Shown piece after piece: positions 3,808 to 52,764 of a stretch of DNA of 64,000 bases (positions within the stretch are counted from its first letter, which is position 1; each line of letters begins with the position of its first letter). The notes under the pieces were generated by a model. It did no database searches and was not told where the DNA came from. It worked only from the letters and a program-made list of their open reading frames with translations. A program made the position numbers and the translations under genes. The stretch spans positions 124,001 to 188,000 of the IMG/VR virus record IMGVR_UViG_3300028394_002328, one strand, 5' to 3'.

Positions 3808-3817
3808 GAGGTAACGC

Positions 3818-37449: not shown

Positions 37450-39276
37450 GTGGCCACGCTAAAGAATACAACTATTAACGATACCGGGTTTGTTACATTA
37501 CCAGTTGGTAATACAGTACAACGACCTGATACTCCAACAGTTGGAATGATGAGATATAACTCAACTAGTGGCTATGCTGAAGTTTATACTAGTGGTGGTT
37601 GGGCTATTTTTGGTTCTTCTCCACCATCTATTAGCACTATATCACCTGGCACTTATAGTGGTGAACAAGGTACATCTTTTACTATTAATGGTGCTAACTT
37701 TAGTAATGATGCCACAGTTAAATTTATTGATGTAAATAATACTGAATACAATGCTGCTGTTGTTACTTTTGTTAATAGCAGCCAATTAACTGCTACAACT
37801 CCCCAAGATTTTACTATAGCACAGGGTCCACTTGATGTTAAAGTATCACAGGCTAGTGGTACAGTTACCAAATTAGATTGTATTGACACGGGCGGAAGTC
37901 CTGGATGGGTTACTACTGCTGGTCAAATAGGTGGTACTATTTATAGAAATGGATCAGTTAGCGTAACTGTTTCAGCCACAGATCCTGACTCAGGTGCTAC
38001 GGTTACTTATTCAGTGTATTCAGGCGCACTTCCATCTGGGTTATCTCTAAACGCAAGCACTGGTGCTATTACAGGGACTGCTCCCAATGTAGGCAGTGAT
38101 ACAACTTACAATTTTACATTGCGAGCAACTGACAACGCAGGTAATACATCTGACCGTGCGTTTAGTATGGTAATATTACAGGGCGCACCTGGAGCACCTA
38201 CTATAGGTACTGCTACTGCAACAAGCGCAACAACTGCAACCGTAGTATTTACGGCACCTGCTAATACAGGTGGAAGTACAATTACTAGTTACACTGCTGT
38301 GTCAAGTCCAAGTAGTATTACCGGTACACTAAGTCAAGCTGGTTCAGGTACTATTACAGTTAGTGGATTAGCTGCTGGTACAAGTTACACCTTTACTGTA
38401 TATGCTACTAATTCGTATGGTAATAGTACTAGTAGTTCGGCAAGTAACAGTATAACAACAAATCAAGTAGCACCATCAACAGTTGAATACTTAGTGCTTG
38501 CAGGCGGTGCTGGTGGTGGAACTAATCACGCAGGTGGTGGTGGTGCAGGTGGTATGTTGACTTCTACATTATCGGTTTCAGCGAGTACTAATTATACAGT
38601 TACAGTTGGTGGTTCTGGAACAGGCGGAATTGGTGGATATGGTAATAGAGGAACTAATGGTTCAACTAGTCAATTTGCTAGTATTAGTACAACAGGTGGT
38701 GGCGGCGGCGGTGGCAGAGGCGGAGGTCCTGGTATTGCTGGCGGATCAGGTGGTGGCGGTGGCGGAGGTAGCGGAGATGAAGGATACGGAGGCACTACTG
38801 ATGCAAGCCAAGGTTATAGAGGTGGCCAAGCAGTTGACTTATATGGAGCTGGCGGCGGCGGCGCCGGCGGTCAAGGTGGTGATAGATCCGGATCTAGCGG
38901 TGGAGCCGGTGGATCGGCAGCGTATAGTAGCATAACAGGCACATCTACCGCTTATGGTGGTGGAGGTGGTGGAGGTGGCTATGGTAGTGGAACAGCTACA
39001 GCCGGTGGATCTGGTATTGGCGGAAATGGTGGTGATGGTAATTCAGGAACTCCTGGTTATTCAGCACCATATGCTAACACAGGATCTGGTGGAGGCGGCG
39101 GCGGTCCTGCTTGGGGAGCCGGCGGAAATGGATCATCCGGAGTTGTAATCATAGCCTATCCAAATACATTTAAAACACTATCTTCAATTGGCGGTGGATT
39201 AAGTTACGATCAACCAAGTAGATCAGGTTATAGGGTATATCGCTTTACCGGTGGCACAGGTTCAATAAGTTGGTAA
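37450..39276 (+). CDS. Modular adhesin 1: LPxG..QRP anchor, IPT/TIG, He_PIG, FN3, glycine-rich tip
   Basis: Domains readable in the translation; ends GYRVYRFTGGTGSISW. Confidence 0.8.
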   Translation: MATLKNTTINDTGFVTLPVGNTVQRPDTPTVGMMRYNSTSGYAEVYTSGGWAIFGSSPPSISTISPGTYSGEQGTSFTINGANFSNDATVKFIDVNNTEYNAAVVTFVNSSQLTATTPQDFTIAQGPLDVKVSQASGTVTKLDCIDTGGSPGWVTTAGQIGGTIYRNGSVSVTVSATDPDSGATVTYSVYSGALPSGLSLNASTGAITGTAPNVGSDTTYNFTLRATDNAGNTSDRAFSMVILQGAPGAPTIGTATATSATTATVVFTAPANTGGSTITSYTAVSSPSSITGTLSQAGSGTITVSGLAAGTSYTFTVYATNSYGNSTSSSASNSITTNQVAPSTVEYLVLAGGAGGGTNHAGGGGAGGMLTSTLSVSASTNYTVTVGGSGTGGIGGYGNRGTNGSTSQFASISTTGGGGGGGRGGGPGIAGGSGGGGGGGSGDEGYGGTTDASQGYRGGQAVDLYGAGGGGAGGQGGDRSGSSGGAGGSAAYSSITGTSTAYGGGGGGGGYGSGTATAGGSGIGGNGGDGNSGTPGYSAPYANTGSGGGGGGPAWGAGGNGSSGVVIIAYPNTFKTLSSIGGGLSYDQPSRSGYRVYRFTGGTGSISW

Positions 39277-39279
39277 TAT

Positions 39280-40332
39280 ATGGCAACCCTTAAAAATTCA
39301 ACCATTAACGATACACAATTCTTTACATTGCCTGCAGGTACTACGGCACAACGGCCAGCTAGCCCTGTACAGGGCATGACACGCTATAATACAACATTAG
39401 GTTATATTGAGTGGTACGATAGTGTAAGTGCAACATGGCGACCTATCTATCAAAGTCCAAGTATTGAAGTAACTTATTTAGTAGTTGGTAGTGGCGGAGG
39501 CGGCGGAGGTGGCTTTAGTACAGATGCCGCAGGTGGAGGTGGAGGTGCCGGCGCATATATAGAAGGCACTGAGTATCTAGTGTCAGGCACCTCCAAAATA
39601 ATTACTGTTGCAGCCGGTGGTGAAGGTGGTGCAGGTTCTGTTGGTGTTAGAGGTGGTGTTGGTAGTAACACAGTGTATGGTAGTGTCACTGCTAATGGTG
39701 GCGCAGGTGGTGGAACATATAGTGGAAACCCTGCTTATAATCAGGGTATGGATGGCACCAGTAATGGCAATGCATCTGGATCTGGTGGTGCAGGTGCGGG
39801 ATCTGCAACAAATCCAGGAGGAGCCGGGGGAGCATACGGAAATGCAGGTGGATCGCACACGGGTACAGGACAAAGTAACAAATCTACATCATGCGGTGGT
39901 GGGGGTGGGGCAGGCGCAGCAGGTGGAAATGGTACTGCAAATAGCACCGGCGGTGCAGGTGGTATCGGAAAATTAAGCGCTATGACAGGTTTGTATTATG
40001 CTGGTGGAGGTGGAGGTGGTTCTACACAGGGATCAACTGCACAAGGTGGTAATGGAGGTGGCGGTAATGCCGGAGCACCCCCTGGAACTGGTGGAGGGGG
40101 TAATAATGGTTCTGCTGGAACGACAAATCGCGGAGGAGGCGGTGGGGGAGCCAGTGCAGGTAGTGTAACTGTTACAGGTGGAAACGGTGGAAGTGGGGTC
40201 GTAATATTAAGAATAGGCGCTAGTTATATTGTGACTATCGGTGTTGGATTATCATATTCACTAGATACTTCAAATCCAGTATATAAAATTTATACGTTTA
40301 CCTCAGGAACAGGCACAATAACATTTAGTTAA
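39280..40332 (+). CDS. Adhesin 2: anchor plus one glycine-rich domain
   Basis: MATLKNSTIND..LPAGTTAQRP; YLVVGSGGGGG..; ends YKIYTFTSGTGTITFS. Confidence 0.8.
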   Translation: MATLKNSTINDTQFFTLPAGTTAQRPASPVQGMTRYNTTLGYIEWYDSVSATWRPIYQSPSIEVTYLVVGSGGGGGGGFSTDAAGGGGGAGAYIEGTEYLVSGTSKIITVAAGGEGGAGSVGVRGGVGSNTVYGSVTANGGAGGGTYSGNPAYNQGMDGTSNGNASGSGGAGAGSATNPGGAGGAYGNAGGSHTGTGQSNKSTSCGGGGGAGAAGGNGTANSTGGAGGIGKLSAMTGLYYAGGGGGGSTQGSTAQGGNGGGGNAGAPPGTGGGGNNGSAGTTNRGGGGGGASAGSVTVTGGNGGSGVVILRIGASYIVTIGVGLSYSLDTSNPVYKIYTFTSGTGTITFS

Positions 40333-40349
40333 TTAAAAAGGAGAAAAAA

Positions 40350-40718
40350 ATGGCACATTATGCTTTTTTAGATGAAAATTATGTAGTAACAGAAGTTATA
40401 GTTGGTAAAGACGAAAGCAACTTTGATTGGGAAAGACACTATGGTGATTTCCGTGGTCAATTGTGTAAGCGTACTAGTTATAACACAATAGGTGGACAAC
40501 ACACATTAGGTGGACAACCTTATAGAAAAAATTATGCAGGCATAGGTTATACTTATGATCCACAGCGTGATGCTTTCATTCCACCTCAACCATATCCAAG
40601 TTGGACATTAAACGAGGATACTTGTAATTGGGATCCATATAAACCATATCCTAGTGATGGTGGTAGATATACTTGGGATGAAGATCAATTAGATTGGATA
40701 GCAGTACCTACTGAATAA
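40350..40718 (+). CDS. Small aromatic-rich 'MAHYAF' protein 1 (unknown function)
   Basis: Strong SD AGGAG; MAHYAFLDEN.VV.EVIVG..KRTSYNT..YRKNYAGIGYTYD..RDAFIPPQPYPSW. Confidence 0.85.
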   Translation: MAHYAFLDENYVVTEVIVGKDESNFDWERHYGDFRGQLCKRTSYNTIGGQHTLGGQPYRKNYAGIGYTYDPQRDAFIPPQPYPSWTLNEDTCNWDPYKPYPSDGGRYTWDEDQLDWIAVPTE

Positions 40719-40725
40719 TATGTAA

Positions 40726-43434
40726 ATGGCCACCCTTAAAAACACTACAGTAAACGATACTGGTTACTTACAGTTACCAGTTGGTACAACTGATCAAAGA
40801 CCAGTTAGCCCCGCCAACGGCTATACTAGATACAATACCGACTTGCGTGTAGTAGAATATTATGATGCTAACTACAGTAGTTGGATGAGTGTAGTAAGTG
40901 GTGCTAGTGGTACTACACTTAGTGTTGATTTTCTTGTGGTAGCCGGGGGTGGAGGTGGCGGGTTTGACGTATCTGGTGCTGGTGGTGCAGGCGGATTGAG
41001 AACCAGTGCAGGAACCAGTGGCGGTGGTGCCTCAGCCGAAAATGTAGTAACAGCTACCGTTGGCACTGCATATACTGTTACTGTAGGCAGCGGAGGTGCC
41101 GGAAACACATCATCAGGTGTTGGCACCAATGGTAGTAATTCTGTTTTTGGTTCTATTACCGCAATTGGTGGGGGTGGCGGTGGCGGTGCTGCTTACGCAG
41201 GTGTTGCTGGAGGCAGTGGCGGTGGCGGTGGCGCCGGGGCTACTTACACTGGCGGTTTGGGCACAGCCAGTCAAGGGTACGTTGGCGGTACCAGTTATCA
41301 AGCAGGCACCAATTACAGTGCTGGTGGCGGTGGTGGGTCGGGTTCTGTCAGCTCTGCTGCGTCAGCAAGTAAAGGTGGCGACGGTGGGGCAGGAACTGCT
41401 TCTACAATTACTGGCAGTGCAGTAACATATGCTGGTGGAGGTGGAGGTGGATTCTTAAGTACCGCCGGTGCTGCTTCTGCCAGCTCTCGTGGCATAGGTG
41501 CTGCTGGTGGTGGTTCAGGTGGGGTTAGTAGTAGTACTACAATAGTATTTTCATCAACCTCTGCTACATCAAATACAGGTAGTGGCGGCGGTGGCAGTGG
41601 TTGGACCAATGGATCAAATGGGTCGGGTGGTTCGGGTGGTTCAGGTATAGTTGTACTCAAATTCCCAGCTGCATTCTATTTGACAGCCGATGCAGGATTG
41701 ACTAGTAGCGTGGTTACTAGTGGTGCTTATAAGATTGCTACATTCACTGCTGGCACGGGCCCAGTTTATTTTAGTAATACTTCGCCACTTGATGTAAGTT
41801 ATTTAGTGGTTGCTGGTGGCGGTGGATCAGGTGGTCCTGGCAATAGATCAGCTTATACTAATTCTTCAGCATGGTCAGGTGGAGGTGGCGCTGGTGGGTT
41901 ACTAACTGGAACTATTAGCACTATACTTTTAGGGGCCAGTTATACAGTTACAGTTGGTGCTGGTGGGTCAGTAGACAATAATGGAACAAATAGCGTGTTT
42001 AATACATACACCGCTATAGGGGGCGGAGCCGGCGGTGATTCATCTACTGGGGGAGATAACGGTAATAGTGGTGGCTCAGGTGGAGGAGGAGGCGGAGACG
42101 TTGCAACCTCAGGCGGATCGGCTACCGCAGGACAAGGTTACGCAGGTGGAGCTGGACAAGACCTTTCGCCAGAATCTGGAGGTGGCGGTGGAGGCGCCGG
42201 GGGTGTTGGCAATCCAGGCACAACAACAGGAGCAGGTGGTGTTGGATATGCAAGTTCTATTACAGGTACTTCTACTTACTACGCAGGTGGAGGCGGTGGT
42301 GGTGCAGGAGTCGGAACACGAACTACCAATACTGGTGGATTAGGTGGAGGTGGAAATGGTACTACTGTTGCATACGGTTCGACTTCAACAGCTACTCCTG
42401 GTACACCAAATACTGGTGGTGGTGGCGGAGCAGGTCCAACAGCAGGTGGATCCGGTGTAGTCATACTAGCATACGCATCTAATTATTATATTAATGTTGG
42501 CTCAGGTCTAACAGCAGACACAAGTTTGTCAAATGGTGTTAAATATACCAAATTCACAGCAGGTACTGGCTCAATTTCATTTACTACTAGTCCCACTTTT
42601 ACAGTAGATTATCTAGTAGTTGCTGGTGGAGGTAGTGGTGCTACATATACACCTAGCAGTGGTTATGCTAGTGGTAATACAGGTAGTGCTAGTGTTTTTA
42701 ACATTATAACCGCATCAGGTGGAGGTTATGGAGGAGCTTGGAACGCTGCTAGTGGCACTGTAGGAGGAGCAGGTGGTTCCGGTGGTGGCGGCGGTCCTAT
42801 AAATGTAGCAAATCAATCAATAGCAGGCGGAGCTGGCACTGCTGGTCAAGGTTATGCAGGTGGTTCAGGAGTATACACTGGTTCAGCTTATGTAAGCGGT
42901 GGAGGTGGTGGTGCTGGTGGTATTGGTGGTAATGGATCAGGAAGCACATGTGGTGCTGGTGGTGTTGGATATGGTAGTGCGATCAATGGCACCCTTACTT
43001 ATTATGCTGGTGGTGGTGGGGGAGGTACGGCAATCGGTTCTGCTGGAGCAGGTGGAAATGGAGGTGGAGGTGCAGGTGGTAGAGGCGCGAATGGTACATC
43101 CGGTACTCCTAACACCGGAGGTGGCGGGGGTGGCGCAGATTCTGGAATAGGTGCTGGTAATGGTGGAGGTGGCGCCGGTGGATTGTTAGCCAATGTCGCT
43201 TCTAACTTGTCTACCGGTGTTTCATATACTGTAACTATTGGGGCAGGTGCAGCATCGGTTGGTACTGGCACAGGTACTAGTGGCGCAGGTGGTTCAGGTA
43301 TCGTCATACTGCGTGTACCAAGTAATTACTCAGCGACCTTCTCAGGTGGATTAACTACTAGTCTAAGCACTTCAGTAACCGGTTATAAAACCTACACAGT
43401 AACAGCCGGCACTGGTACGGTAACCTTTAGTTAA
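40726..43434 (+). CDS. Adhesin 3: anchor plus three tandem glycine-rich domains
   Basis: Three (V/Y)LVVAGGG..GSGIV(V/I)L..FTAGTG units; ends YKTYTVTAGTGTVTFS. Confidence 0.8.
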   Translation: MATLKNTTVNDTGYLQLPVGTTDQRPVSPANGYTRYNTDLRVVEYYDANYSSWMSVVSGASGTTLSVDFLVVAGGGGGGFDVSGAGGAGGLRTSAGTSGGGASAENVVTATVGTAYTVTVGSGGAGNTSSGVGTNGSNSVFGSITAIGGGGGGGAAYAGVAGGSGGGGGAGATYTGGLGTASQGYVGGTSYQAGTNYSAGGGGGSGSVSSAASASKGGDGGAGTASTITGSAVTYAGGGGGGFLSTAGAASASSRGIGAAGGGSGGVSSSTTIVFSSTSATSNTGSGGGGSGWTNGSNGSGGSGGSGIVVLKFPAAFYLTADAGLTSSVVTSGAYKIATFTAGTGPVYFSNTSPLDVSYLVVAGGGGSGGPGNRSAYTNSSAWSGGGGAGGLLTGTISTILLGASYTVTVGAGGSVDNNGTNSVFNTYTAIGGGAGGDSSTGGDNGNSGGSGGGGGGDVATSGGSATAGQGYAGGAGQDLSPESGGGGGGAGGVGNPGTTTGAGGVGYASSITGTSTYYAGGGGGGAGVGTRTTNTGGLGGGGNGTTVAYGSTSTATPGTPNTGGGGGAGPTAGGSGVVILAYASNYYINVGSGLTADTSLSNGVKYTKFTAGTGSISFTTSPTFTVDYLVVAGGGSGATYTPSSGYASGNTGSASVFNIITASGGGYGGAWNAASGTVGGAGGSGGGGGPINVANQSIAGGAGTAGQGYAGGSGVYTGSAYVSGGGGGAGGIGGNGSGSTCGAGGVGYGSAINGTLTYYAGGGGGGTAIGSAGAGGNGGGGAGGRGANGTSGTPNTGGGGGGADSGIGAGNGGGGAGGLLANVASNLSTGVSYTVTIGAGAASVGTGTGTSGAGGSGIVILRVPSNYSATFSGGLTTSLSTSVTGYKTYTVTAGTGTVTFS

Positions 43435-43444
43435 AGAGTAAAAA

Positions 43445-44050
43445 ATGGCACATTATGCTTTCTTAAATGAATATTTGATTGTTACAGAAGTTATCACTGG
43501 ATTAGATGAAAATAACTATGATTGGGAAACTCATTATGGTAATTTTCGTAGACAACTTTGTAAACGCACTAGTTACAATACATACGGTGGTGTACATAAT
43601 CTAGGTGGCACACCATATAGAAAAAACTATGCTGGTATTGGTTTTAGTTATGACCCACAGCGTGATGCGTTTATACCACCAAAACCAAATGATTATTGGT
43701 TGTTGAACGAAGAAACATGCTTATGGGAAGAACCCTCACCAACAAATTGTGAAGGTGTTTACTTTGCTAGGTTAGATGAAGATAATATTGTTCAACAATT
43801 ATTTTATGTTAAAAATTCTGATACTTCACTCGATGGTGTTATAAACGAAAACATAGGATTAGCATTCTGTAGAAGTGTTTTTGGTAGTGATACAAATTGG
43901 AAGCAAACTAGTCACGATCCACATTTTAGATTTCATTTTGGTGATATTGGCTATAGTTATGATGAAAACTATGATGCTTTTATACCACCTCAACCCGATC
44001 CAAATTGGGTATTAGACTATGATACATTCACTTGGTATTCACCTAGATAA
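43445..44050 (+). CDS. 'MAHYAF' protein 2, tandem two-domain version
   Basis: First half closely parallels 40350; second half (YFARLDEDNIV..WKQTS..GYSYDENYDAFIPPQP) is a second copy of the domain. Confidence 0.85.
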   Translation: MAHYAFLNEYLIVTEVITGLDENNYDWETHYGNFRRQLCKRTSYNTYGGVHNLGGTPYRKNYAGIGFSYDPQRDAFIPPKPNDYWLLNEETCLWEEPSPTNCEGVYFARLDEDNIVQQLFYVKNSDTSLDGVINENIGLAFCRSVFGSDTNWKQTSHDPHFRFHFGDIGYSYDENYDAFIPPQPDPNWVLDYDTFTWYSPR

Positions 44051-44055
44051 AGACA

Positions 44056-44061
44056 TAAATA
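44056..44061 (+). promoter_or_regulatory. Late promoter core, 4 nt before ATG
   Basis: CATAAATA-CAGT-ATG(44066), no SD. Confidence 0.65.
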
Positions 44062-44065
44062 CAGT

Positions 44066-46645
44066 ATGTCAGGAAATATCACCCAAATAGAACCGTTTAA
44101 CCTAAACAATGCTGGAAGTTATACTTTCGGCAATGCTACCGTAACCGGTAATACTGATTTAGGGATAGTAGGCAATGTTACTATTACAGGTGGTACTAGT
44201 GGTTATATATTACAAACTGATGGATCAGGTAATTTAAGTTGGGTCAACCCAGTAGATACATCAGGGTACAGTGGCGCTAGCGGCTATTCAGGTGTCAGTG
44301 GCTATAGTGGTATTTCAGGATACACCGGTATAAGTGGTTACACTGGAGTATCAGGGTATACAGGCGTAAGTGGTGTTAGTGGATACACTGGGGTCAGTGG
44401 ATACACTGGGGTCAGTGGATATAGTGGTGCATCAGGTTCTAGTGGATATTACGGACAAGATGGAGCTAGTGGTTATTCAGGTGTAAGCGGATATACTGGA
44501 GTAAGTGGTTACACAGGTACTAGTGGATACACTGGAATTAGTGGCTATACTGGTACTAGTGGTACTTCAGGTTATACTGGTGCAAGTGGATACACTGGAA
44601 TTAGTGGCTATACAGGTGCATCAGGCACAAGTGGATACACCGGAGTCAGTGGTTATTCAGGTGGTACAGGTAGTAATGGGGCTAGTGGTTATTCAGGGGT
44701 ATCAGGATTCTCTGGATTTAACGCTAATGTAACTTATTCAAGTACTCCACCTGTTAGTCCTCATATAGGTGATTTGTGGGTTAACTCTGATACAGCAGTT
44801 TTGACAATGTACTTCAATGATGGGGTATCAAACAATTGGGCAGAATTAGAAGCAGCACAATCATTTAGTACATCAGGTAGCAGTGGATATTCAGGTTATA
44901 GTGGACTAGGTATAAGTGGTTATAGCGGTTACTCAGGTGGTACTGGTAGTAATGGAGTTAGTGGCTATTCAGGTATAAGTGGATATAGCGGCGGTACTGG
45001 TAGTAATGGTGCTAGTGGTTACTCAGGAATAAGTGGTTATTCAGGTGGCACTGGTAGTAATGGTGCTAGTGGTTATTCAGGAACTAGTGGAGCTACTGGA
45101 CCAAGTTCTATTACAGCAATCAACAATCAACAAAATACAGGTACTGGTGCATTAGGTTTACCAGTTGGAACTACGGCAGAAAGACCCGCTACTGCGTATA
45201 ATGGATATACTAGAATCAATACTAGTACAACCTTTATGGAAATTTACTATAATGGAAATTGGATTAGTGCAGTATCATTGATAACTGCGCCGAACGCACC
45301 AACAATTGGTACTGCTACAGTAGTGAGTTCAACTAGTGCTACTGTCACATACACTGCTCCAGCATACGATGGTGGAGCAACAATTACTAGTTACACGGCT
45401 GTTAGTAGCCCGGGAAATATTACAGGAACATTAAGTCAAGCAGGGTCAGGTACTATTACTGTTAATGGATTGACTACTGGTACTGCTTACACATTTACTG
45501 TATATGCTACTAATAGTGTCGGAAATAGCGTTGCAAGTAGTGCAAGCAACAGTATTACAACTTGGTCAGTACCTGGTGCACCTACTATCGGTACTGCTAC
45601 CGCCACTGGGACAACAACGGCAACAGTTACATTTACTGCACCTGCTAGTAATGGCGGTACAGCGATTACTCAGTATATTGCTACATCAAGTCCAGGTAGT
45701 GTCACTGGAACATTAAGTCAAGCAGGGTCAGGCACTATTAGTATTAGTGGACTAACTCAAGGTACAAGTTATACATTTACAGTTAAAGCGGTTAATGCTG
45801 TTGGTCAAAGTGCTGCAAGTAGTGCAAGTAATAGTATAACTACACAATCTGCAACACCTACATCAGTTGAATATCTAGTGGTTGCTGGTGGAGGTGGTGG
45901 AGGTGGTGCATCTGGTGGTAGAGGTGGCGGTGGAGGTGCAGGCGGAATGTTAACCAGCACTCTATCTGTTTCAGCAAGTACTGCATACACTGTAACCGTT
46001 GGCGGTGGCGGACCTGGTAGTAATTTAACTGCAGGACGAGGATCTAATGGAACAGCTAGTCAATTTGCTTCGATTAGTACAGTAGGAGGAGGAGGTGGCG
46101 CCGGTGACGACGGTGGAGGTATTGGTTATGGATCTGCTGGTGGATCCGGTGGTGGTGGCCATTATGATGGTGCTGGCGGTGCTGGCACAGCCGGACAAGG
46201 TAATAATGGTGGCTCTGGTATAACCAGTCCAAACTTTGGATCAGGCGGTGGCGGTGGCGCCGGAGCTGTTGGACAAAGTGGACAAACTTATAAAGGCGGC
46301 GATGGTGGTATAGGAAATCTATCTAGTATAACTGGTTCATCTACATACTATGCAGGCGGTGGTGGTGGCCAACTTAATGGCGGTACTGCTGGATCTGGCG
46401 GTGCAGGTGGTGGTGGTGCAGGTAACGGCCAAAATAATGGCTTTAGTAATACTGGAGGCGGTGGAGGTGGAAATGGCTCTGGTGGTACAGCAGGTGCCGG
46501 TGGTTCTGGAGTAGTTATCATTGCTTATCCTGACTCATACAATGCGCCTGCATCAATTTCCGGCGGATTAACTTACGATCAACCAAGCAGGTCAGGTTAT
46601 AGAGTGTATCGTTTCACACAAGGTACTGGTACTATTACTTGGTAA
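44066..46645 (+). CDS. Adhesin 4: Gly-X-Ser repeats, anchor motif, 2x FN3, glycine-rich tip
   Basis: Gly-X-Ser blocks at about 44264-44720 and 44870-45100; LPVGTTAERP; two APTIGTAT FN3 units; ends GYRVYRFTQGTGTITW. Confidence 0.8.
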   Translation: MSGNITQIEPFNLNNAGSYTFGNATVTGNTDLGIVGNVTITGGTSGYILQTDGSGNLSWVNPVDTSGYSGASGYSGVSGYSGISGYTGISGYTGVSGYTGVSGVSGYTGVSGYTGVSGYSGASGSSGYYGQDGASGYSGVSGYTGVSGYTGTSGYTGISGYTGTSGTSGYTGASGYTGISGYTGASGTSGYTGVSGYSGGTGSNGASGYSGVSGFSGFNANVTYSSTPPVSPHIGDLWVNSDTAVLTMYFNDGVSNNWAELEAAQSFSTSGSSGYSGYSGLGISGYSGYSGGTGSNGVSGYSGISGYSGGTGSNGASGYSGISGYSGGTGSNGASGYSGTSGATGPSSITAINNQQNTGTGALGLPVGTTAERPATAYNGYTRINTSTTFMEIYYNGNWISAVSLITAPNAPTIGTATVVSSTSATVTYTAPAYDGGATITSYTAVSSPGNITGTLSQAGSGTITVNGLTTGTAYTFTVYATNSVGNSVASSASNSITTWSVPGAPTIGTATATGTTTATVTFTAPASNGGTAITQYIATSSPGSVTGTLSQAGSGTISISGLTQGTSYTFTVKAVNAVGQSAASSASNSITTQSATPTSVEYLVVAGGGGGGGASGGRGGGGGAGGMLTSTLSVSASTAYTVTVGGGGPGSNLTAGRGSNGTASQFASISTVGGGGGAGDDGGGIGYGSAGGSGGGGHYDGAGGAGTAGQGNNGGSGITSPNFGSGGGGGAGAVGQSGQTYKGGDGGIGNLSSITGSSTYYAGGGGGQLNGGTAGSGGAGGGGAGNGQNNGFSNTGGGGGGNGSGGTAGAGGSGVVIIAYPDSYNAPASISGGLTYDQPSRSGYRVYRFTQGTGTITW

Positions 46646-46649
46646 ACAA

Positions 46650-46655
46650 TAAATA
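46650..46655 (+). promoter_or_regulatory. Late promoter core, 5 nt before ATG
   Basis: CAATAAATATAATCATG; near-identical copy at 48873. Confidence 0.7.
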
Positions 46656-46660
46656 TAATC

Positions 46661-48871
46661 ATGGCAATACTTCAAATAGACCCTAGTTCAATAAATTCTA
46701 GTTCATCATATTCTTTTGCGAATGTGACGGCTAATACATTCACTGCCACTGAAAATTTACAAATTCCTAATGGTAATACGGCACAACGACCTAATAGTCC
46801 AGCATATGGATTAATGAGATATAATACAGAAACTGGTCTTGCTGAAATATATACTAGCAGTGGGTGGGGAGTATTTGGATCACAACCACCTACAATAAGC
46901 ACAGTATCACCAGGTACTTTTAATGGAGAAATAGGTACATCTTTTACTATTAATGGAGCTAATTTTACTAATGACGCTACTGTTAAATTTGTTGATGTAA
47001 ATAACACAGAATACAGTGCAGCGATTGTTACTTTTGTTAACTCTAGTCAATTACTTGCTACTACACCGCAAGACTTTACAGTAGCACAGGGACCACTTGA
47101 TGTTAAAGTAGTTCAACTAAGTGGAACGGTTACTAAATTAAATTGTATTGATACTGGTAGTAGTCCTGGTTGGTATACTCCCGCAGGACAAATTGGTGGT
47201 ACAATTTATAGAAACGGAATAGTTAGTATAACGGTTGTTGCTACTGACCCTGACCCAAGTGCTACTATCACTTATAGTGTGCTTTCAGGCGCACTTCCAA
47301 GCGGATTATCATTGGATTCTAGTACCGGTGTTATCTCTGGTACTGCTCCCGATATTGGTAGTGATACTACATACAACTTCACACTAAGAGCCACAGACAA
47401 CGCAGGTAATACATCTGACCGCGCATTTAGTATAATAATATTACAGGGAGCACCTGGTGCACCTACTGTAGGTACTGCAACAAGATCGGCAAGTCAATCA
47501 GTTCAAGTGACATTTACTGCACCTGCAAATGTTGGTGGTAGTGCAATTACCAGTTACACAGTTACAAGTAGCCCAGGCAGCCTTACAGGGACAGGTGCAA
47601 CAAGTCCTATAACTGTAACTGGTTTGACAAATGGCACAGCATACACATTTACTGTAACCGCTACAAACAGTTATGGCACTAGTGTGGCTAGTAGCGCAAG
47701 TAACTCCGCTACACCGTATACAGTACCTGGTGCACCTACTATTGGTAGTGCTACTTCTACTGGTACTACCACTGCTACAGTTGCTTTCACTGCACCTGCA
47801 AGCAACGGTGGAAGCACTATAACAAGTTACACAGCGGTAAGTAGTCCTGGTAGTATAACCGGTACACTAAGTCAAGCAGGTTCGGGTACTATTACAGTTA
47901 GTGGATTAACCCCAGGTACAAGTTATACATTTACTGTATATGCAACTAATGCAGGTGGTAATAGTTCTAATAGTAGTGCAAGTAATAGCATAACAACAAC
48001 TCAAGTAGCCCCAACATCTGTTGAATATCTTGTTGTTGCTGGTGGAGGTGGAGGTGGGTCAAGATTTGGTGGCGGTGGTGGAGCTGGTGGTATGTTGACT
48101 TCTACTTTATCAGTTTCTGCGAGCACTGGTTATACAGTTACAGTCGGTGGTGGAGGTTCAGGTGGAGCAGGCAGTGGTGGACCTAATACTAATGGAGCAA
48201 CTAACGGCGGTCCAGGTAATAATTCAGTATTTGCATCTATAACCACAATTGGTGGTGGATACGGTGCAGCAGGTGATACTGGAAACGGTGGATCTGGTGG
48301 ATCTGGAGGTGGTGGAGCTGGACGATTTAACAGCAGTGGTGGTAGCGGTACAGGTGGGCAAGGAAATGCCGGTGCTTCTACACTTGGACAAGATGGCGGA
48401 TCAGCATCATTTAATGGTGGTGGTGGTGGTGGAGCAGGAGCAGCAGGACCTTATAATTCATTTGGTGTTGGTGGAAATGGTTCAGCTAGTTCTATTACAG
48501 GATCATCAGTAACATACGCAGGTGGTGGCGGTGGCGGCGGAACAGGAGATGGCGGCGGTCCAGGTGGCGTGAGAAACGGTGGTGCCGGAGGGTCTGGCGG
48601 TGGCGGTGCGGGTGGACCATATTCTGGTGGATCCGCTACAGGTGGTACTAATAACTTGGGTGGAGGAGGCGGAGGTGGAGCCTACAACGCTACATTTAGT
48701 GGTGATAACCAACCCGGTGCTTCTGGTGGATCTGGTGTAGTTATCATTGCTTATCCAAACACATTTTTACCATTGTCATCAATTAGCGGTGGACTCAGTT
48801 ACGATCAACCTACTAGATCAGGTTATAGAGTATATCGCTTTACTGGCGGTACAGGCACTATCTCTTGGTAA
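46661..48871 (+). CDS. Adhesin 5: anchor, IPT, He_PIG, 2x FN3, glycine-rich tip
   Basis: Same architecture as 48887; ends GYRVYRFTGGTGTISW. Confidence 0.8.
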   Translation: MAILQIDPSSINSSSSYSFANVTANTFTATENLQIPNGNTAQRPNSPAYGLMRYNTETGLAEIYTSSGWGVFGSQPPTISTVSPGTFNGEIGTSFTINGANFTNDATVKFVDVNNTEYSAAIVTFVNSSQLLATTPQDFTVAQGPLDVKVVQLSGTVTKLNCIDTGSSPGWYTPAGQIGGTIYRNGIVSITVVATDPDPSATITYSVLSGALPSGLSLDSSTGVISGTAPDIGSDTTYNFTLRATDNAGNTSDRAFSIIILQGAPGAPTVGTATRSASQSVQVTFTAPANVGGSAITSYTVTSSPGSLTGTGATSPITVTGLTNGTAYTFTVTATNSYGTSVASSASNSATPYTVPGAPTIGSATSTGTTTATVAFTAPASNGGSTITSYTAVSSPGSITGTLSQAGSGTITVSGLTPGTSYTFTVYATNAGGNSSNSSASNSITTTQVAPTSVEYLVVAGGGGGGSRFGGGGGAGGMLTSTLSVSASTGYTVTVGGGGSGGAGSGGPNTNGATNGGPGNNSVFASITTIGGGYGAAGDTGNGGSGGSGGGGAGRFNSSGGSGTGGQGNAGASTLGQDGGSASFNGGGGGGAGAAGPYNSFGVGGNGSASSITGSSVTYAGGGGGGGTGDGGGPGGVRNGGAGGSGGGGAGGPYSGGSATGGTNNLGGGGGGGAYNATFSGDNQPGASGGSGVVIIAYPNTFLPLSSISGGLSYDQPTRSGYRVYRFTGGTGTISW

Positions 48872-48875
48872 TCAA

Positions 48876-48881
48876 TAAATA
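48876..48881 (+). promoter_or_regulatory. Late promoter core, 5 nt before ATG
   Basis: CAATAAATATAATTATG. Confidence 0.7.
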
Positions 48882-48886
48882 TAATT

Positions 48887-51031
48887 ATGTCATTACTTAG
48901 AATTGAACCAGCCGCGGTAAATGCCAATTCATCATTCTCTTTTGCAGGAGTAAATGCTACAGGCAATTTACAGTTACCTACTGGAAATACTGCTCAACGG
49001 CCAGGAAGTCCAATAGCCGGGACAATTAGATATAATTCACAAACAGGTTTCGCGGAAATATATACTAGCAGTGGATGGGCAACATTTGGTGCTCCTCCTC
49101 CAACTATCAGTACCGTATCACCTGGTACTTATAATGGAGAAACAGGTACTGAATTTACTGTAAATGGGGCTAATTTTACTAATGACGCTGTAGTTAAATT
49201 TGTTGATGTAAACAATACAGAATATAGCGCTACTGTAGTTACATTTGTAAATTCAAGTCAATTAATAGCCACTACACCTCAAGATTTTACCGTAGCACAA
49301 GGACCACTTGATGTTAAAGTAACACAATTAAGTGGAACAGTTACTAAACTAGCCTGTATAGATACTGGTGGTAGTCCCAGTTGGGTTACTACTGCTGGTC
49401 AAATAGGCGGTACAATTTATAGAAATGGCTCAGTTAGTGTAACTGTCTCAGCTACCGATCCTGATGCAAGTGCTACGATTACTTACAGTGTGCTTTCAGG
49501 TGCATTGCCAAGTGGATTAAGTTTGAATTCAAGTACAGGTGCTATTACTGGTACTGCACCTGATGTAGGTAGTGATACTACTTACAATTTTACATTGCGA
49601 GCAACTGACAATGCAGGTAATACATCTGACCGTGCGTTTAGTATGGTAATATTACAAGGTGCTCCAGGTGCACCTGTTATCGGTACAGCAACAAGATCAG
49701 CCAGCCAATCAGTTCAAGTTACATTTACCGCACCTGCAAATGTTGGCGGTAGTAGTATTACTAGTTACACTGCTACCAGTAGTCCAGGTAGTATTACAGG
49801 CACCGGTGCAAGCAGTCCAGTTACTGTAACTGGGTTGACAAATGGAACTGCATATACATTTACTGTTACTGCTACTAATAGTTATGGTACTGGTACTGCC
49901 AGTGGTGCTAGTAATTCTGCTACTCCATATGGTGTACCTGGTGCACCTACTATTGGTACTGCTACTTCTACTGGTACTACAACTGCTACTGTATCATTTA
50001 CCGCACCTGCAAGCAACGGCGGTAGTACAATAACCAGTTACACTGCGGTTAGTAGCCCTGGCAATGTCACTGGCACATTAAGTCAAGCAGGATCAGGTAC
50101 TATTACAGTAAGTGGATTAAGCGCAGGTACAAGTTACACATTTACAGTATATGCTACAAATGCCGCAGGTAATAGCGCTAATAGTTCAGCAAGTAATCAG
50201 ATAACAACAACTCAAGTAGCTCCAACTTCAGTTGAATACTTAGTATTAGCTGGTGGAGGTGGCGGCAGAGATTGTGGTACAGCAATTGGATCATCTGGTG
50301 GCGGTGGTGCTGGTGGATATTATAATTCAACTATAGCAGTATCGGGAAGTACTAGTTACACTGTAACAGTTGGTGGTGGAGGTACAAGAAATAATAATGG
50401 ATCAAACAGTGAATTTGCTAGCGTACTCGCATATGGTGGCGGTACTGGAGGAACAGGTACTCACGGTGCTGGCGAAAACGGAACTTCAGGTGGATCAGGT
50501 GGTGGCGGTGGTTGGGGTGATAATTCATACGGATATGGTGGATCCAGTCTAGGTGGCGGTAATGCAGGTGGAGTGGGCGGTACACGAAGTCAACCCGGTG
50601 GTGATCCGCCGTATGGTGCAGGTGGAGGAGGAGGCGCTGGTAGTGCTGGTGGTAACTACAGTGGTGGTGCAGGTGGATCAGGCGCTTCTAGTTCTATTAC
50701 AGGATCTTCGGTTACTTACGCAGGTGGCGGCGGCGGTGGTAATGAGTTAGGAACACCTGGTAGTGGTGGATCAGGAATAGGTGGTGCAGGTGGCACAAAT
50801 GGTGGTGGATACAATGCACCCACCGCTAACACAGGTGGCGGTGGAGGAGGAGCAGGTGGATATAATGGTGGCGCCGGAGGATCCGGTTCTTCTGGGGTAG
50901 TTATCATAGCATATCCAAATACATTTTTACCATTGTCATCAATATCTGGCGGACTCAGTTATGATCAACCCAGCAGAAGTGGTTATAGAGTATATCGCTT
51001 TACTGGCGGTACAGGTCCTATTAGCTGGTAA
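48887..51031 (+). CDS. Adhesin 6: anchor, IPT, He_PIG, 2x FN3, glycine-rich tip
   Basis: Tandem paralogue of 46661; ends GYRVYRFTGGTGPISW. Confidence 0.8.
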   Translation: MSLLRIEPAAVNANSSFSFAGVNATGNLQLPTGNTAQRPGSPIAGTIRYNSQTGFAEIYTSSGWATFGAPPPTISTVSPGTYNGETGTEFTVNGANFTNDAVVKFVDVNNTEYSATVVTFVNSSQLIATTPQDFTVAQGPLDVKVTQLSGTVTKLACIDTGGSPSWVTTAGQIGGTIYRNGSVSVTVSATDPDASATITYSVLSGALPSGLSLNSSTGAITGTAPDVGSDTTYNFTLRATDNAGNTSDRAFSMVILQGAPGAPVIGTATRSASQSVQVTFTAPANVGGSSITSYTATSSPGSITGTGASSPVTVTGLTNGTAYTFTVTATNSYGTGTASGASNSATPYGVPGAPTIGTATSTGTTTATVSFTAPASNGGSTITSYTAVSSPGNVTGTLSQAGSGTITVSGLSAGTSYTFTVYATNAAGNSANSSASNQITTTQVAPTSVEYLVLAGGGGGRDCGTAIGSSGGGGAGGYYNSTIAVSGSTSYTVTVGGGGTRNNNGSNSEFASVLAYGGGTGGTGTHGAGENGTSGGSGGGGGWGDNSYGYGGSSLGGGNAGGVGGTRSQPGGDPPYGAGGGGGAGSAGGNYSGGAGGSGASSSITGSSVTYAGGGGGGNELGTPGSGGSGIGGAGGTNGGGYNAPTANTGGGGGGAGGYNGGAGGSGSSGVVIIAYPNTFLPLSSISGGLSYDQPSRSGYRVYRFTGGTGPISW

Positions 51032-51040
51032 GGACTATTA

Positions 51041-52738: not shown

Positions 52739-52739
52739 C

Positions 52740-52745
52740 TAAATA
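52740..52745 (+). promoter_or_regulatory. Late promoter core
   Basis: TAAATA 2 nt after the stop and 19 nt before the ATG at 52765. Confidence 0.55.
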
Positions 52746-52764
52746 CTATTAAGATAAAAATATT

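What the first reader, a model, noticed from the sequence alone, without database searches (positions are those of the whole stretch)
39280..44050. Two-gene module: '-TFS' type glycine-rich adhesin always followed by a 'MAHYAF' partner
Seen: the glycine-rich genes fall in two C-terminal classes. The five ending YDQP.RSGYRVYRFT.GTG.I(S/T)W have no partner gene; the two ending YK.YT.T.GTGT.TFS are each immediately followed by a MAHYAF gene. The single-domain adhesin has a one-domain partner and the three-domain adhesin has a tandem two-domain partner. The partner is rich in conserved Tyr/Trp/Pro (YAGIG..YD..RDAFIPP.P..W). Inference: a dedicated chaperone, cap or adaptor for polyglycine tips; I know of no described function for this family.
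Basis: partly seen in the sequence, partly recalled or inferred. Interest (0 to 1): 0.68.

Follow-up and report, generated by a model that had tools for sequence, protein, structure and literature searches.

The report
Glycine-rich phage adhesin with dedicated partner
A small, very common but unannotated phage protein ("MAHYAF") is encoded right behind glycine-rich tail adhesins in water phages of many kinds and is predicted to clamp onto them, most likely as their folding and assembly helper.

Summary
There are seven Gly_rich_2 (PF21722) adhesin genes. Five end in ...YRVYRFTxGTGxI(S/T)W and have no partner. Two end in ...TFS and are each followed 10-17 nt later by a MAHYAF gene, of 122 aa (one domain) and 201 aa (two domains).

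The two rules drawn from this do not hold elsewhere. In IMG/VR, 48 of 77 adhesins of the "partnerless" YRVYRFT class are directly followed by a partner. Multi-domain adhesins elsewhere have single-domain partners (6 of 6).

What does hold is the module itself. The partner (PHROG 7759; no Pfam or NCBIfam; 6,322 clusters at 50% identity) lies just downstream of a Gly-rich adhesin in at least 70 of 82 cases. It does so in podo-, sipho- and myoviruses of four host phyla.

The adhesin folds like the Pam3 gp24 and Bxb1 tail-tip TNF-like plus glycine-rich domain (Z 11.6 and 13.4). The partner's best PDB-wide match, though weak (Z 4.4), is the fibre-binding N-domain of the Pam3 chaperone gp25.

A complex model scores 0.87 against 0.00 for controls. 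It uses the same elements as gp25 (strand 2 and helix 1).

Most likely this is a new family of tail-fibre chaperone or transient cap. No experiment supports this yet.

The parts
39280..40332 (+). Adhesin 1, 350 aa. It has an N-terminal anchor motif (TLPxGTTAQRP..G..RYN) and one TNF-like plus glycine-rich (TG / Gly_rich_2) domain, and ends ...YKIYTFTSGTGTITFS.
   Evidence: PF21722 E 1.1e-9. AF2 model pLDDT 85. Residues 59-318 match Bxb1 tail tip chain Q (Z 13.4, 171 aa, 36% id) and Pam3 fibre gp24 (Z 11.6, 177 aa, 28% id).
40350..40718 (+). Partner 1, 122 aa, one domain. It starts MAHYAF and has an AGGAG ribosome-binding site 7 nt upstream of its ATG.
   Evidence: phrog_7759 E 1.8e-35, no Pfam. 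AF2 pLDDT 94.6. Complex model with adhesin 1 scores ipSAE 0.87 against 0.00 for the best control. Sequence.
40726..43434 (+). Adhesin 2, 902 aa. It has the same N-terminal anchor motif and three tandem TG domains, ending ...FTAGTGPVYFS, ...FTAGTGSISFT and ...VTAGTGTVTFS.
   Evidence: PF21722 E 2.2e-34. phrog_2295 E 1.7e-105 in 3 stretches. Sequence.
43445..44050 (+). Partner 2, 201 aa, a tandem of two partner domains. Domain 1 is about 43445-43762 and domain 2 about 43763-44047. Domain 2 is more diverged and lacks the last Trp hairpin.
   Evidence: phrog_7759 E 1.8e-51 in 2 stretches. Own-genome search gives 66% and 33% identity to partner 1. Profile E 1.4e-49 and 6.1e-27.
37450..39276 (+). 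Adhesin of the 'W class', 608 aa: TIG, He_PIG, fn3 and TG domains. No partner gene directly behind it.
   Evidence: It keeps the predicted partner-contact residues (TVG.GG, G-S/T, SG, T.GTG).
44066..46645 (+). Adhesin of the 'W class', 859 aa: collagen repeats, 2 fn3 and a TG domain. No partner behind it.
46661..48871 (+). Adhesin of the 'W class', 736 aa. No partner behind it.
48887..51031 (+). Adhesin of the 'W class', 714 aa. No partner behind it.
51041..52738 (+). Adhesin of the 'W class', 565 aa. No partner behind it.

Best explanation
The MAHYAF protein is a dedicated accessory protein of phage adhesins that carry a TNF-like plus glycine-rich ('TG', polyglycine or 'brush', Pfam Gly_rich_2) receptor-binding domain.

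It is made from the gene just behind the adhesin gene and binds one TG domain. Binding uses its N-terminal small beta-sandwich (strand 2 and helix 1, plus the MAHY N-terminus and the RKNYAGIG loop). The site lies on conserved residues at the base of the glycine-rich loops and on the last TNF-like hairpin, which I infer to be the junction of the two subdomains.

Its most likely job is to hold this glycine-rich, hard-to-fold region while it folds and assembles, and then to leave. It may stay for a while as a protective cap. This is what the Pam3 chaperone gp25 does for the structurally related fibre gp24.

The partner differs from gp25 and the Tfa proteins in its C-terminus. It lacks their helical trimerisation domain and instead carries one to five Trp/Pro-rich beta-hairpin units.

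Shown: the synteny, the fold of the adhesin, and the absence of any annotated family. Predicted only: binding and its geometry. Inferred: the chaperone role and release before or after virion completion.
For: Synteny with the adhesin:
- Of 82 distinct partner genes in 80 IMG/VR loci, 60 lie 0-40 nt downstream of a Gly-rich ORF.
- Ten more have one gene in between, mostly a PF13759 oxygenase and once a second partner copy. Two of the unresolved cases (L006, L083) also show the adhesin-oxygenase-partner order by eye; the others were not checked further and several lie at contig ends.
- Only 8 of 73 have a Gly-rich gene downstream.

The same pairing is seen in cultured phages of three morphotypes and four host phyla:
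- HTVC025P (podovirus of Pelagibacter).
- CRP-207 (Roseobacter).
- Melnitz-2 (myovirus of Methylophilales; 3 adhesins and 3 partners).
- Bellamy and S-RSM4 (cyanomyoviruses).
- HTVC023P.
- phiPsal1 (siphovirus of an actinobacterium).
Unusual partner architectures (P0129, P0136) also sit behind Gly-rich genes.

Adhesin fold: Pam3 gp24 (Z 11.6) and Bxb1 tail tip protein (Z 13.4) stand far above the next hits, ALK/LTK at about 5.

Partner fold:
- Among 48,161 PDB representatives the top match is 7ypx chain a, a 162-residue chain. I take it to be Pam3 gp25, because the paper gives gp25 as Met1-Phe162.
- The match covers gp25 residues 3-56, its fibre-binding beta-sandwich (Z 4.4, 54 aa).
- The third match is the Mu tail-fibre chaperone.

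Complex model:
- ipSAE was 0.87, 0.87 and 0.86, against 0.00 for the best of 3 controls.
- That mark was reached by 58 of 80 solved complexes and 2 of 110 mismatched pairs.
- The runs share at least 83% of contacts, and the partner pLDDT is at least 84.
- The lowest-error contacts use partner residues 15-19 (strand 2) and 31, 34 (helix 1). The Pam3 paper reports that gp25 binds gp24 'mainly by beta2 and alpha1' (PMC9608196).

Conservation:
- The partner is more conserved than its adhesin (mean pairwise identity 0.65 against 0.49) across hosts of different phyla.
- This fits a housekeeping role on the conserved part of the domain rather than receptor reading.
- The distance matrices of paired partner and adhesin correlate (Mantel r 0.32; 1 of 999 permutations reached it). 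This is confounded by shared descent.
Against: - There is no experimental datum: no solubility, pull-down or virion proteomics for any member.
- The fold match to gp25 is weak. Z 4.4 is below what unrelated models often reach as their best score, so it counts only because of what the hit is.
- The complex model may lean on memory of the solved Pam3 gp24-gp25 complex, and it used my own alignments.
- Predicted interface residues are not enriched for conservation: 15 observed against 14.0 expected on the partner (p 0.42), and 0.55 against 0.52 on the adhesin.
- The partner lacks the helical domain that defines Tfa-type chaperones.
- Many adhesins of the same family have no partner gene next to them: 5 of 7 in the window, about 9 of 12 in the whole genome, and 25 of 77 in the reverse scan.
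- The model has more than 100 contacts, far more than I would expect from the 550 A2 gp25 interface (my own comparison). Together with the repeatable C-terminal hairpins, this would also suit a protein that stays bound.
Confidence: 0.58

Rival explanations
1. The partner is a lasting virion component. In this reading it is a cap, adaptor or co-receptor subunit that stays on the TG domain in the mature fibre, as gp38 stays on gp37 in T2/S16-type phages or as Mu Tfa stays on its fibre. Its Trp/Pro-rich hairpins would contribute to binding of host surface glycans or extend the fibre.
For: - The predicted interface is large, 107-120 contacts.
- The C-terminal unit PYPSWxLNExTxxWxxPxPxPxDxxxYxWxExxxxW is repeated up to about five times in some relatives (P0129). 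Other relatives carry long helical inserts, in which NCBIfam finds only weak coiled-coil-type matches (TIGR03794 E 6.8e-4, SMC E 4.2e-3). Both features look structural.
- Aromatic-rich hairpin repeats are typical of glycan and choline-binding modules. Weak Foldseek rows include LytB choline-binding repeats and OCRE domains.
- Chaperones that remain as caps are documented for Mu and for Alteromonas phages (PMC10579305).
Against: - The partner is highly conserved (about 65% identity) across phages of Alpha- and Betaproteobacteria, Actinobacteria and Cyanobacteria. Receptor-reading parts are normally hypervariable.
- One partner gene serves genomes with 6-12 adhesin genes (Bellamy 1 to about 6; this phage 3 to 12). 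That is hard to square with a stoichiometric subunit of each fibre.
- The nearest solved analogue, gp25, is absent from virions by mass spectrometry (PMC9608196).
Confidence: 0.22
2. The partner belongs to a post-translational modification system. It would present the adhesin to a phage 2OG-Fe(II) oxygenase (PF13759) that hydroxylates the adhesin, or it would itself be that enzyme's substrate.
For: - In 14 of 82 loci a PF13759 oxygenase of about 200 aa sits exactly between adhesin and partner.
- In S-RSM4 a PF13759 protein lies directly behind the partner, followed by two genes annotated as 2OG-Fe(II) oxygenase-like. In HTVC023P, genes annotated as 2OG-Fe(II) oxygenase-like lie one gene behind the partner; the gene directly behind it had no Pfam hit.
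- In S-CAM8 an annotated 2OG-Fe(II) oxygenase and a hypothetical protein, together with a carbamoyltransferase, separate adhesin and partner. The hypothetical protein, which is directly upstream of the partner, had no Pfam hit.
Against: - Most loci (68 of 82) have no oxygenase at the site.
- The 95%-complete genome of this phage has no PF13759 gene at all, yet keeps three partners.
- The complex model needs no third protein.
Confidence: 0.07
3. The adjacency is only co-transfer. The partner would have an unrelated role, for example in lysis timing, exclusion or host takeover, and would travel with adhesin cassettes during recombination.
For: Adhesin cassettes are recombination hot spots. Many adhesins lack a partner. 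Interface residues are not enriched for conservation.
Against: - The order and spacing (adhesin, then partner 0-40 nt later) are kept across three virion morphotypes and four host phyla, and across architectural variants.
- In small genomes the counts are 1 to 1 or 3 to 3.
- The complex score is 0.87 against 0.00 for controls.
- Every IMG/VR locus, cultured-phage record and variant contig that I examined had a Gly-rich gene nearby. For S-CAM8 that gene lies three genes upstream.
Confidence: 0.08

Closest known systems
Cyanophage Pam3 tail fibre gp24 with its chaperone gp25 (PDB 7YPX; Wei et al. 2022, PMC9608196)
   Same: - The fibre carries a TNF-like plus glycine-rich distal domain of the same fold as the window's adhesins (Z 11.6, 177 aa, 28% id).
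- The helper gene lies just behind the fibre gene.
- The helper has a small N-terminal beta-sandwich, which is the best PDB-wide match of the partner (Z 4.4).
[quoted passage not shown] These are the same elements that make the lowest-error contacts in the complex model here.
   Different: - There is no detectable sequence similarity. gp25 is found by BLAST and HHpred as a Tfa-type protein, whereas the partner hits no Pfam, NCBIfam or PDB sequence.
- gp25 has a C-terminal four-helix domain that trimerises. The partner has only beta hairpins rich in Trp, Tyr and Pro after residue 60.
- The gp25 interface is small (about 550 A2), and the one predicted here is much larger.
- Pam3 has one fibre and one chaperone. 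This phage has 12 adhesins and 3 partners.
Tail fibre assembly proteins: Mu Tfa (PDB 5YVQ), lambda Tfa / Caudo_TAP (PF02413), Phage_tail_APC (PF16778)
   Same: - They are small proteins encoded directly downstream of the fibre gene and bind the distal part of the fibre.
- Mu Tfa is the third-best structural match of the partner's N-domain (Z 2.6).
- Some remain on the fibre as caps (PMC10579305).
   Different: - The partner is not a member. No member of its alignment matches PF02413 or PF16778, even at E 10.
- hhalign against the PF16778 protein of Melnitz finds nothing.
- Melnitz and CRP-207 encode true PF16778 chaperones elsewhere, for other fibres, in addition to the MAHYA partner.
gp38 adhesin of T2/T6/S16-type phages on the tip of gp37 (PDB 6F45)
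   Same: It is a two-protein fibre tip in which polyglycine-II-type glycine-rich motifs form the receptor-binding domain.
   Different: There the small, separately encoded protein (gp38) is itself the glycine-rich adhesin and is hypervariable. Here the glycine-rich domain is part of the large protein. The small protein is glycine-poor (7 of its 122 residues are Gly; sequence) and strongly conserved.
Mycobacteriophage Bxb1 tail tip protein (PDB 9D93 chain Q), the 'brush' / polyglycine-rich domains of mycobacteriophage tail proteins
   Same: It is the best structural match of the adhesin's TG domain (Z 13.4, 171 aa, 36% id). The domain is deployed on the distal tail as a presumed anti-receptor (PMC13243795).
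   Different: I found no information on a MAHYA-type partner in Bxb1, and the Bxb1 papers were not available to read. No Mycobacterium phage appears among the ten commonest organism names of the 37 phage records that hold a partner.

Membership tests
PHROG 7759 (unknown function) | Significant full-length match to the family profile | tested here: met
   E 1.8e-35 (residues 1-120 on profile positions 1-122 of 125) for 40350-40718. E 1.8e-51 in 2 stretches for 43445-44050.
Tfa-type tail fibre assembly chaperones (Pam3 gp25 / Mu Tfa / PF02413 / PF16778) | Gene immediately downstream of the fibre or adhesin gene it serves | tested here: met
   Gaps of 17 and 10 nt in the window. 60 of 82 direct and 10 more with one gene between in IMG/VR. 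Seven cultured phages.
Tfa-type tail fibre assembly chaperones (Pam3 gp25 / Mu Tfa / PF02413 / PF16778) | Sequence membership in PF02413 or PF16778 | tested here: not met
   No Pfam hit at E 0.1 for the window proteins. None of the 84 alignment members hits either family at E 10. hhalign against a PF16778 protein gives probability 0.1%.
Tfa-type tail fibre assembly chaperones (Pam3 gp25 / Mu Tfa / PF02413 / PF16778) | N-terminal beta-sandwich that binds the distal fibre domain | tested here: inconclusive
   The top PDB-wide match is the gp25 N-domain, but only at Z 4.4 (rmsd 3.0, 54 aa). Mu Tfa scores Z 2.6. Foldseek gives E 2.0 for the same chain. The complex model uses strand 2 and helix 1 as gp25 does.
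Tfa-type tail fibre assembly chaperones (Pam3 gp25 / Mu Tfa / PF02413 / PF16778) | [quoted passage not shown] | tested here: not met
   The AF2 model (pLDDT 94.6) has a single helix, 27-35. Residues 60-122 are short strands only. Some relatives carry a long helical insert after strand 1 (P0136, P0211), but the window proteins do not.
Tfa-type tail fibre assembly chaperones (Pam3 gp25 / Mu Tfa / PF02413 / PF16778) | Improves folding or solubility of the fibre; absent from (or only loosely bound to) the virion | not testable with these tools
   This needs co-expression and virion proteomics. None was found in the literature searches.
Gly_rich_2 (PF21722) / TNF-like plus glycine-rich 'TG' receptor-binding domain (the adhesins) | Pfam match above the gathering score, and the fold of Pam3 gp24 / ALK-LTK TG domains | tested here: met
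   All seven genes pass PF21722 at 39-120 bits against a cut-off of 24.3. The model matches 9d93_Qb at Z 13.4, 7ypx_A at Z 11.6 and ALK/LTK at Z about 5.
gp38-type polyglycine adhesin (as identity of the partner) | Glycine-rich motifs forming a PGII sandwich in the small protein | tested here: not met
   Only 7 of the partner's 122 residues are Gly (sequence). Its model shows no extended Gly lattice.

The most novel reading that the evidence does not exclude
The partner would define a new class of fibre chaperone built to recognise polyglycine-II / polyproline-II-type helices. Its conserved Trp/Tyr/Pro hairpin unit (SWxLNExTxxWxxP...YxWxExxxxW), which can be multiplied up to about five times, would read the flat glycine lattice in the way WW, OCRE and related aromatic modules read PPII helices. 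In about a sixth of lineages (14 of 82 loci) it would work together with a dedicated 2OG-Fe(II) oxygenase that modifies the adhesin. One or a few partners would then serve a whole battery of exchangeable adhesins (12 in this jumbo phage) in trans.
Probability: 0.15. Interest if true: 0.72.

Novelty: new variant of a known kind. Interest (0 to 1): 0.5.

Why it matters
Glycine-rich 'TG' or brush domains are emerging as a widespread receptor-binding device of phages: S16 gp38, Pam3 gp24, mycobacteriophage tail tips, and here seven to twelve copies in one jumbo phage. They are hard to express and fold.

The partner family is very large: 6,322 clusters at 50% identity, and more than 8,000 at 90% identity within the query's length window. 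It is restricted to viruses and has no annotation anywhere. It occurs in some of the most abundant aquatic phage groups, including phages of Pelagibacter, Roseobacter, OM43 Methylophilales and cyanobacteria.

Knowing that it is the adhesin's helper would have three uses:
- It would allow thousands of 'hypothetical proteins' to be annotated.
- It would flag the neighbouring gene as the host-recognition protein.
- It would give a practical recipe, co-expression, for producing these adhesins for host-range and structural work.

The recurrent oxygenase in the same cassette also gives a testable lead on the long-unexplained 2OG-Fe(II) oxygenases of marine phages.

Tried and rejected
- Megablast of the region against GenBank phages gave no match.
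- tblastn of the 350-aa adhesin against phages gave no match, probably because of the low-complexity filter. The fraction of adhesins that have a partner could therefore not be estimated from cultured genomes this way.
- The search for related loci with a W-class TG domain returned only the phage itself, because the glycine-rich patterns are too unspecific. I replaced it with a DNA pattern for GYRVYRFTxGTG.
- Pfam (also at E 10 on all 84 members), NCBIfam, a PDB sequence profile search, Foldseek against PDB, and the ESM Atlas named clusters gave nothing for the partner. BFVD and Atlas structure hits are all 'uncharacterized'.
- hhalign of the partner profile against the annotated 'tail assembly chaperones' of Melnitz gave no relation.
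- A metal or disulfide site was considered because C39 and C92 are conserved among close relatives. I rejected it because CRP-207, Melnitz and S-CAM8 lack these cysteines.
- Conservation enrichment at the predicted interface was absent, so I do not use it as support.
- I tested whether the partner is linked to the downstream rather than the upstream adhesin. It is not (8 of 73).
- I tested whether partner length tracks adhesin domain number. It does not.
- I could not test whether W-class adhesins are also predicted to bind the partner, because only one complex job is allowed.
- The Bxb1 (PMC12124961) and Cambillau & Goulet (PMC10062164) papers are not held.
- The reads tools were not used.
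Full report
**1. What is in the window**

The window comes from a myovirus. It has a tail sheath at 382-3111, a tail tube at 3818-4777 and a clamp loader at 24944-25870. Its G+C is about 36%, rising to 45-48% over the glycine-rich genes.

It belongs to an 88-kb IMG/VR record estimated at 26% complete. A 335,035-bp, 95%-complete contig, IMGVR_UViG_3300028394_002328, matched one 275-residue adhesin segment of the window at 100% identity. I take it to be the near-complete genome of the same or a near-identical phage; identity over the rest was not checked. So this is a jumbo phage.

Between 37450 and 52738 lie seven + strand genes, packed with gaps of 3 to 17 nt. Each ends in a Gly_rich_2 domain (PF21722, phrog_2295).

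- Five of them end ...YDQP(S/T)RSGYRVYRFTxGTGxI(S/T)W.
- The other two are 39280-40332 (350 aa, one domain) and 40726-43434 (902 aa, three domains). They end ...GTGTxTFS.
- Each of these two is followed by a gene starting MAHYAF: 40350-40718 (122 aa) and 43445-44050 (201 aa).
- The 201-aa protein is a tandem of two copies of the 122-aa unit.

**2. Does the pattern hold elsewhere?**

The partner is PHROG 7759 ('unknown function') and has no Pfam or NCBIfam family. It is very common.

- More than 8,000 clusters at 90% identity lie within the length window of the word search. All are unnamed or called 'hypothetical'.
- An exhaustive profile search found 6,322 clusters at 50% identity, 3,298 of them at E <= 1e-10.
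- At least 598 IMG/VR stretches encode a relative.
- Atlas clusters of the same fold are 100% viral.

In 80 IMG/VR loci I found 82 distinct partner genes.

- Sixty lie directly (0-40 nt) downstream of an ORF with more than 20% Gly in its last 250 residues.
- Ten more have exactly one gene in between. Mostly this is a 200-aa 2OG-Fe(II) oxygenase (PF13759); once it is a second partner copy.
- The other 12 were left unresolved by my ORF finder. Several lie at contig ends. By eye, L006 and L083 also show the adhesin-oxygenase-partner order.
- The gene downstream of the partner is Gly-rich in only 8 of 73 cases. The link is therefore to the upstream gene.

Cultured phages show the same arrangement:

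| Phage | Morphotype / host | Arrangement |
|---|---|---|
| CRP-207 | Roseobacter phage | adhesin then partner |
| HTVC025P | T7-like pelagiphage | adhesin then partner |
| HTVC023P | pelagiphage | adhesin then partner |
| Melnitz-2 | OM43 myovirus | adhesin then partner |
| Bellamy, S-RSM4 | cyanomyoviruses | adhesin then partner |
| phiPsal1 | actinobacterial siphovirus | adhesin then partner; the Gly-rich ORF is present but not annotated |

Per genome, the adhesin-to-partner counts are 1:1 in CRP-207, HTVC025P and S-RSM4, and 3:3 in Melnitz-2 (each pair adjacent). Bellamy has about 6:1. The complete genome of the window's phage has 12:3.

Only in S-CAM8, a 35%-identical relative, is the adhesin three genes away. 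A carbamoyltransferase, an annotated 2OG-Fe(II) oxygenase and a hypothetical protein lie between them.

**3.

I scanned IMG/VR for the DNA pattern of GYRVYRFTxGTG, the signature of the 'partnerless' class.

- Of 77 evaluable Gly-rich genes with this ending, 48 have a partner directly behind them, 4 have one within 1.6 kb, and 25 have none.
- Endings ...GTISW and ...GTITW occur among those with a partner.
- Upstream adhesins in the first set end in many ways...GNVSWS...GTISW...GTVTV...GTITF. Some stop right after GSGIVIIRY, with no final hairpin at all.
- Adhesins with two or three TG domains elsewhere have ordinary single-domain partners (6 of 6). Lengths do not correlate (rho -0.05).
- The residues that the complex model puts in contact with the partner are kept in the W-class domains of the window as well.

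So nothing in the sequence says that the W class could not use the same partner in trans.

**4. What the two proteins are**

*The adhesin.* Its model has pLDDT 85. Over residues 59-318 it matches the Bxb1 tail tip protein (9d93 chain Q; Z 13.4, 171 aa, 36% id) and the Pam3 fibre gp24 (7ypx_A; Z 11.6, 177 aa, 28% id). The next hits are the TG domains of ALK/LTK at Z about 5.

This is the TNF-like plus glycine-rich fold. In Pam3 it forms the receptor-binding end of the fibre (PMC9608196). Other authors call it a polyglycine-rich or 'brush' domain (PMC13243795).

*The partner.* Its model is very confident (pLDDT 94.6, pTM 0.84).

- It has an N-terminal hairpin (2-7, 12-19), one helix (27-35) and a strand (38-42).
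- After that come only short hairpins carrying the conserved Tyr, Trp and Pro residues.
- Foldseek finds nothing in the PDB.
- An exhaustive alignment to 48,161 representative chains gives only weak scores. The first hit is 7ypx chain a, residues 3-56 (Z 4.4, rmsd 3.0, 54 aa). The third is the Mu tail-fibre chaperone 5yvq_B (Z 2.6).

Chain a has 162 residues. The Pam3 paper gives gp25 as Met1-Phe162, so I take chain a to be the chaperone gp25. Residues 1-55 are its beta-sandwich 'tentacle', which grips the fibre.

A Z of 4.4 would mean nothing on its own. It counts here because the hit is the helper of the very fibre that the neighbouring gene resembles.

**5. Predicted binding**

One complex job was run with adhesin 39280-40332 and partner 40350-40718, using my own alignments A2 and A1.

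- The three runs scored ipSAE 0.87, 0.87 and 0.86. The best of three controls scored 0.00.
- In the tool's calibration this mark was reached by 58 of 80 solved complexes and by 2 of 110 mismatched pairs. The tool notes that these counts hold only roughly with user alignments.
- The runs share at least 83% of their contacts, and the partner pLDDT is at least 84.

The contacts with the lowest expected error link partner residues 15-19 (strand 2), 31 and 34 (helix 1), 3-4 and 65 with adhesin residues 109-114, 128-129, 305 and 342-345. These include the conserved TVGxGG, G-S-N and S-G motifs and the TxGTG turn.

[quoted passage not shown] The agreement is striking. However, the solved Pam3 complex may be in the model's memory, so this shows likeness rather than proof of binding.

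Interface residues are not more conserved than the rest: 15 against 14.0 expected on the partner (p 0.42), and 0.55 against 0.52 on the adhesin. I therefore do not count conservation as support.

Paired partner and adhesin distances correlate (Mantel r 0.32; 1 of 999 permutations reached it). Shared descent alone could produce this.

**6. Most likely mechanism**

The partner is a dedicated helper of TG-domain adhesins. It is translated from the next gene; partner 1 has a strong AGGAG site. It grips the side of the nascent TG domain with its N-terminal sandwich and shields the glycine-rich loops while they pack. It is then released, or kept for a time as a cap.

Two points favour a helper over a receptor-reading subunit.

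- The partner is much better conserved than the adhesin (0.65 against 0.49 mean pairwise identity). It is conserved across phages whose hosts belong to four phyla.
- One to three partner genes accompany six to twelve adhesin genes in the large genomes.

In Pam3, gp25 is needed for soluble, trimeric gp24 and is absent from virions.

Two points leave the structural-cap rival open. The predicted interface is large, and the C-terminal part of the partner looks structural (section 7). I give 0.58 to chaperone or transient cap and 0.22 to a lasting virion subunit. I give 0.07 to a role in an oxygenase-driven modification system and 0.08 to mere co-transfer.

**7. How it differs from what is known**

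It is not a member of the Tfa families.

- There is no sequence match to PF02413 or PF16778, even at E 10.
- There is no relation by hhalign.
- It has no C-terminal helical trimerisation domain.
- Melnitz and CRP-207 carry true PF16778 chaperones for other fibres, beside the MAHYA partner.

Instead, the C-terminal half is a unit of about 40 residues: PYPSWxLNExTxxWxxPxPxPxDxxxYxWxExxxxW.

- Relatives repeat this unit up to about five times (P0129).
- Others carry a helical insert of about 100 to 180 residues between strands 1 and 2 (P0136, P0211, P0174, P0265).
- The two variants whose contigs I fetched, P0129 and P0136, still sit behind Gly-rich genes.

The unit recalls aromatic modules that bind polyproline-II helices, such as WW and OCRE domains. 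One alignment member hits the OCRE family at E 0.014, and weak OCRE rows appear in Foldseek. That is a lead, not a finding.

**8. Verdict**

The window observation is real. The 'class' and 'domain number' rules are local accidents.

The two-gene module itself is a robust, widespread and so far unannotated pairing of adhesin and helper. It works like the Pam3 gp24-gp25 pair, but with a helper of a different family. I file it as a new variant of a known kind.

All functional statements rest on synteny and prediction. The decisive experiments are simple and are listed separately.

Noticed in passing
L030:3396-3998, L083:3393-3998, L022, L034, L043, L045, L054, L073, L075 and others; also L086:4592-5152 (S-RSM4), L004 (S-CAM8), L088 (HTVC023P): A 2OG-Fe(II) oxygenase of about 200 aa (PF13759, E 1e-21 in L030 and L083) sits exactly between adhesin and partner in 14 of 82 loci. 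In S-RSM4 a PF13759 protein lies directly behind the partner. In HTVC023P and S-CAM8, genes annotated as 2OG-Fe(II) oxygenase-like lie one gene away from the partner. The genes directly next to the partner there (L088:4560-5060, L004:5354-5959) had no Pfam hit. This suggests that some lineages hydroxylate the adhesin or the partner. The window's own 335-kb genome has no such gene.
   Followed up: partly
L087:about 2890-3998 (Pontimonas phage phiPsal1, MG835450.1, about 15640-16750): A Gly-rich adhesin ORF ending ...GSGIVIVRYAV lies directly upstream of the partner (phiPsal1_024) but is not annotated. The record instead annotates two ORFs in another frame (phiPsal1_022 and 023, 'no BlastP matches'), whose translations are Val/Leu/Ala-rich. 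They look like off-frame readings of the glycine-rich ORF.
   Followed up: yes
L213 (G001:C1:192000-202000), outside the window: A 95%-complete, 335-kb contig that I take to be this phage's near-complete genome holds a second cluster of five TG-adhesin genes. A third partner gene (118 aa, MAHFAKV...) lies there behind a 306-aa adhesin ending ...SSGSITF. In total there are 12 adhesin genes and 3 partner genes in one jumbo phage.
   Followed up: yes
P0129, P0136, P0211, P0174, P0265 (relatives from metagenomes); L211, L212: The partner family has architectural variants. In some, the C-terminal Trp/Pro hairpin unit is repeated up to about five times. In others, an acidic, helical insert of about 100 to 180 aa lies between strand 1 (MAHYA...) and strand 2. 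NCBIfam finds only weak coiled-coil-type matches in the P0136 insert. P0129 and P0136, the two whose contigs were fetched, lie directly behind Gly-rich genes.
   Followed up: partly
window 9516-17378 and 52765-57792: There are two very long collagen-like proteins. One is 2,620 aa with 16 Pfam Collagen stretches (E 8.6e-182). The other is 1,675 aa (E 2.3e-97) and also has DUF4183. Adhesin 44066-46645 also starts with collagen repeats (GYSGxSGYTG...).
   Followed up: no
window 39280-39450, 37450-37620, 40726-40900, 46661-46870, 48887-49090: Several adhesins share an N-terminal motif: (L/I)PxG(T/N)TxQRPxxPxxGxxRYNxxxGxxExY. In the model, residues 16-58 match a C-terminal piece of the CBA120 tailspike TSP3 (5w6f 583-623; Z 3.9, 38% id). 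This may be a common attachment or adaptor module.
   Followed up: no
window 34541-37438: The 965-aa gene just upstream of the adhesin array matches long-tail-fibre distal-subunit PHROGs over its C-terminal 400 residues (phrog_5668 E 1.4e-21, among others). Its C-terminal sequence looks like the self-cleaving intramolecular chaperone domain of fibres and spikes. That reading is an inference from the sequence and was not tested against Pfam.
   Followed up: no
window 40333-40349 compared with the other intergenic gaps in 39277-52764: Partner 1 is preceded by a strong Shine-Dalgarno sequence (AAAAAGGAGAAAAAAATG). The adhesin genes and partner 2 have AT-rich gaps with no clear AGGAG. This may reflect different translation levels.
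   Followed up: no
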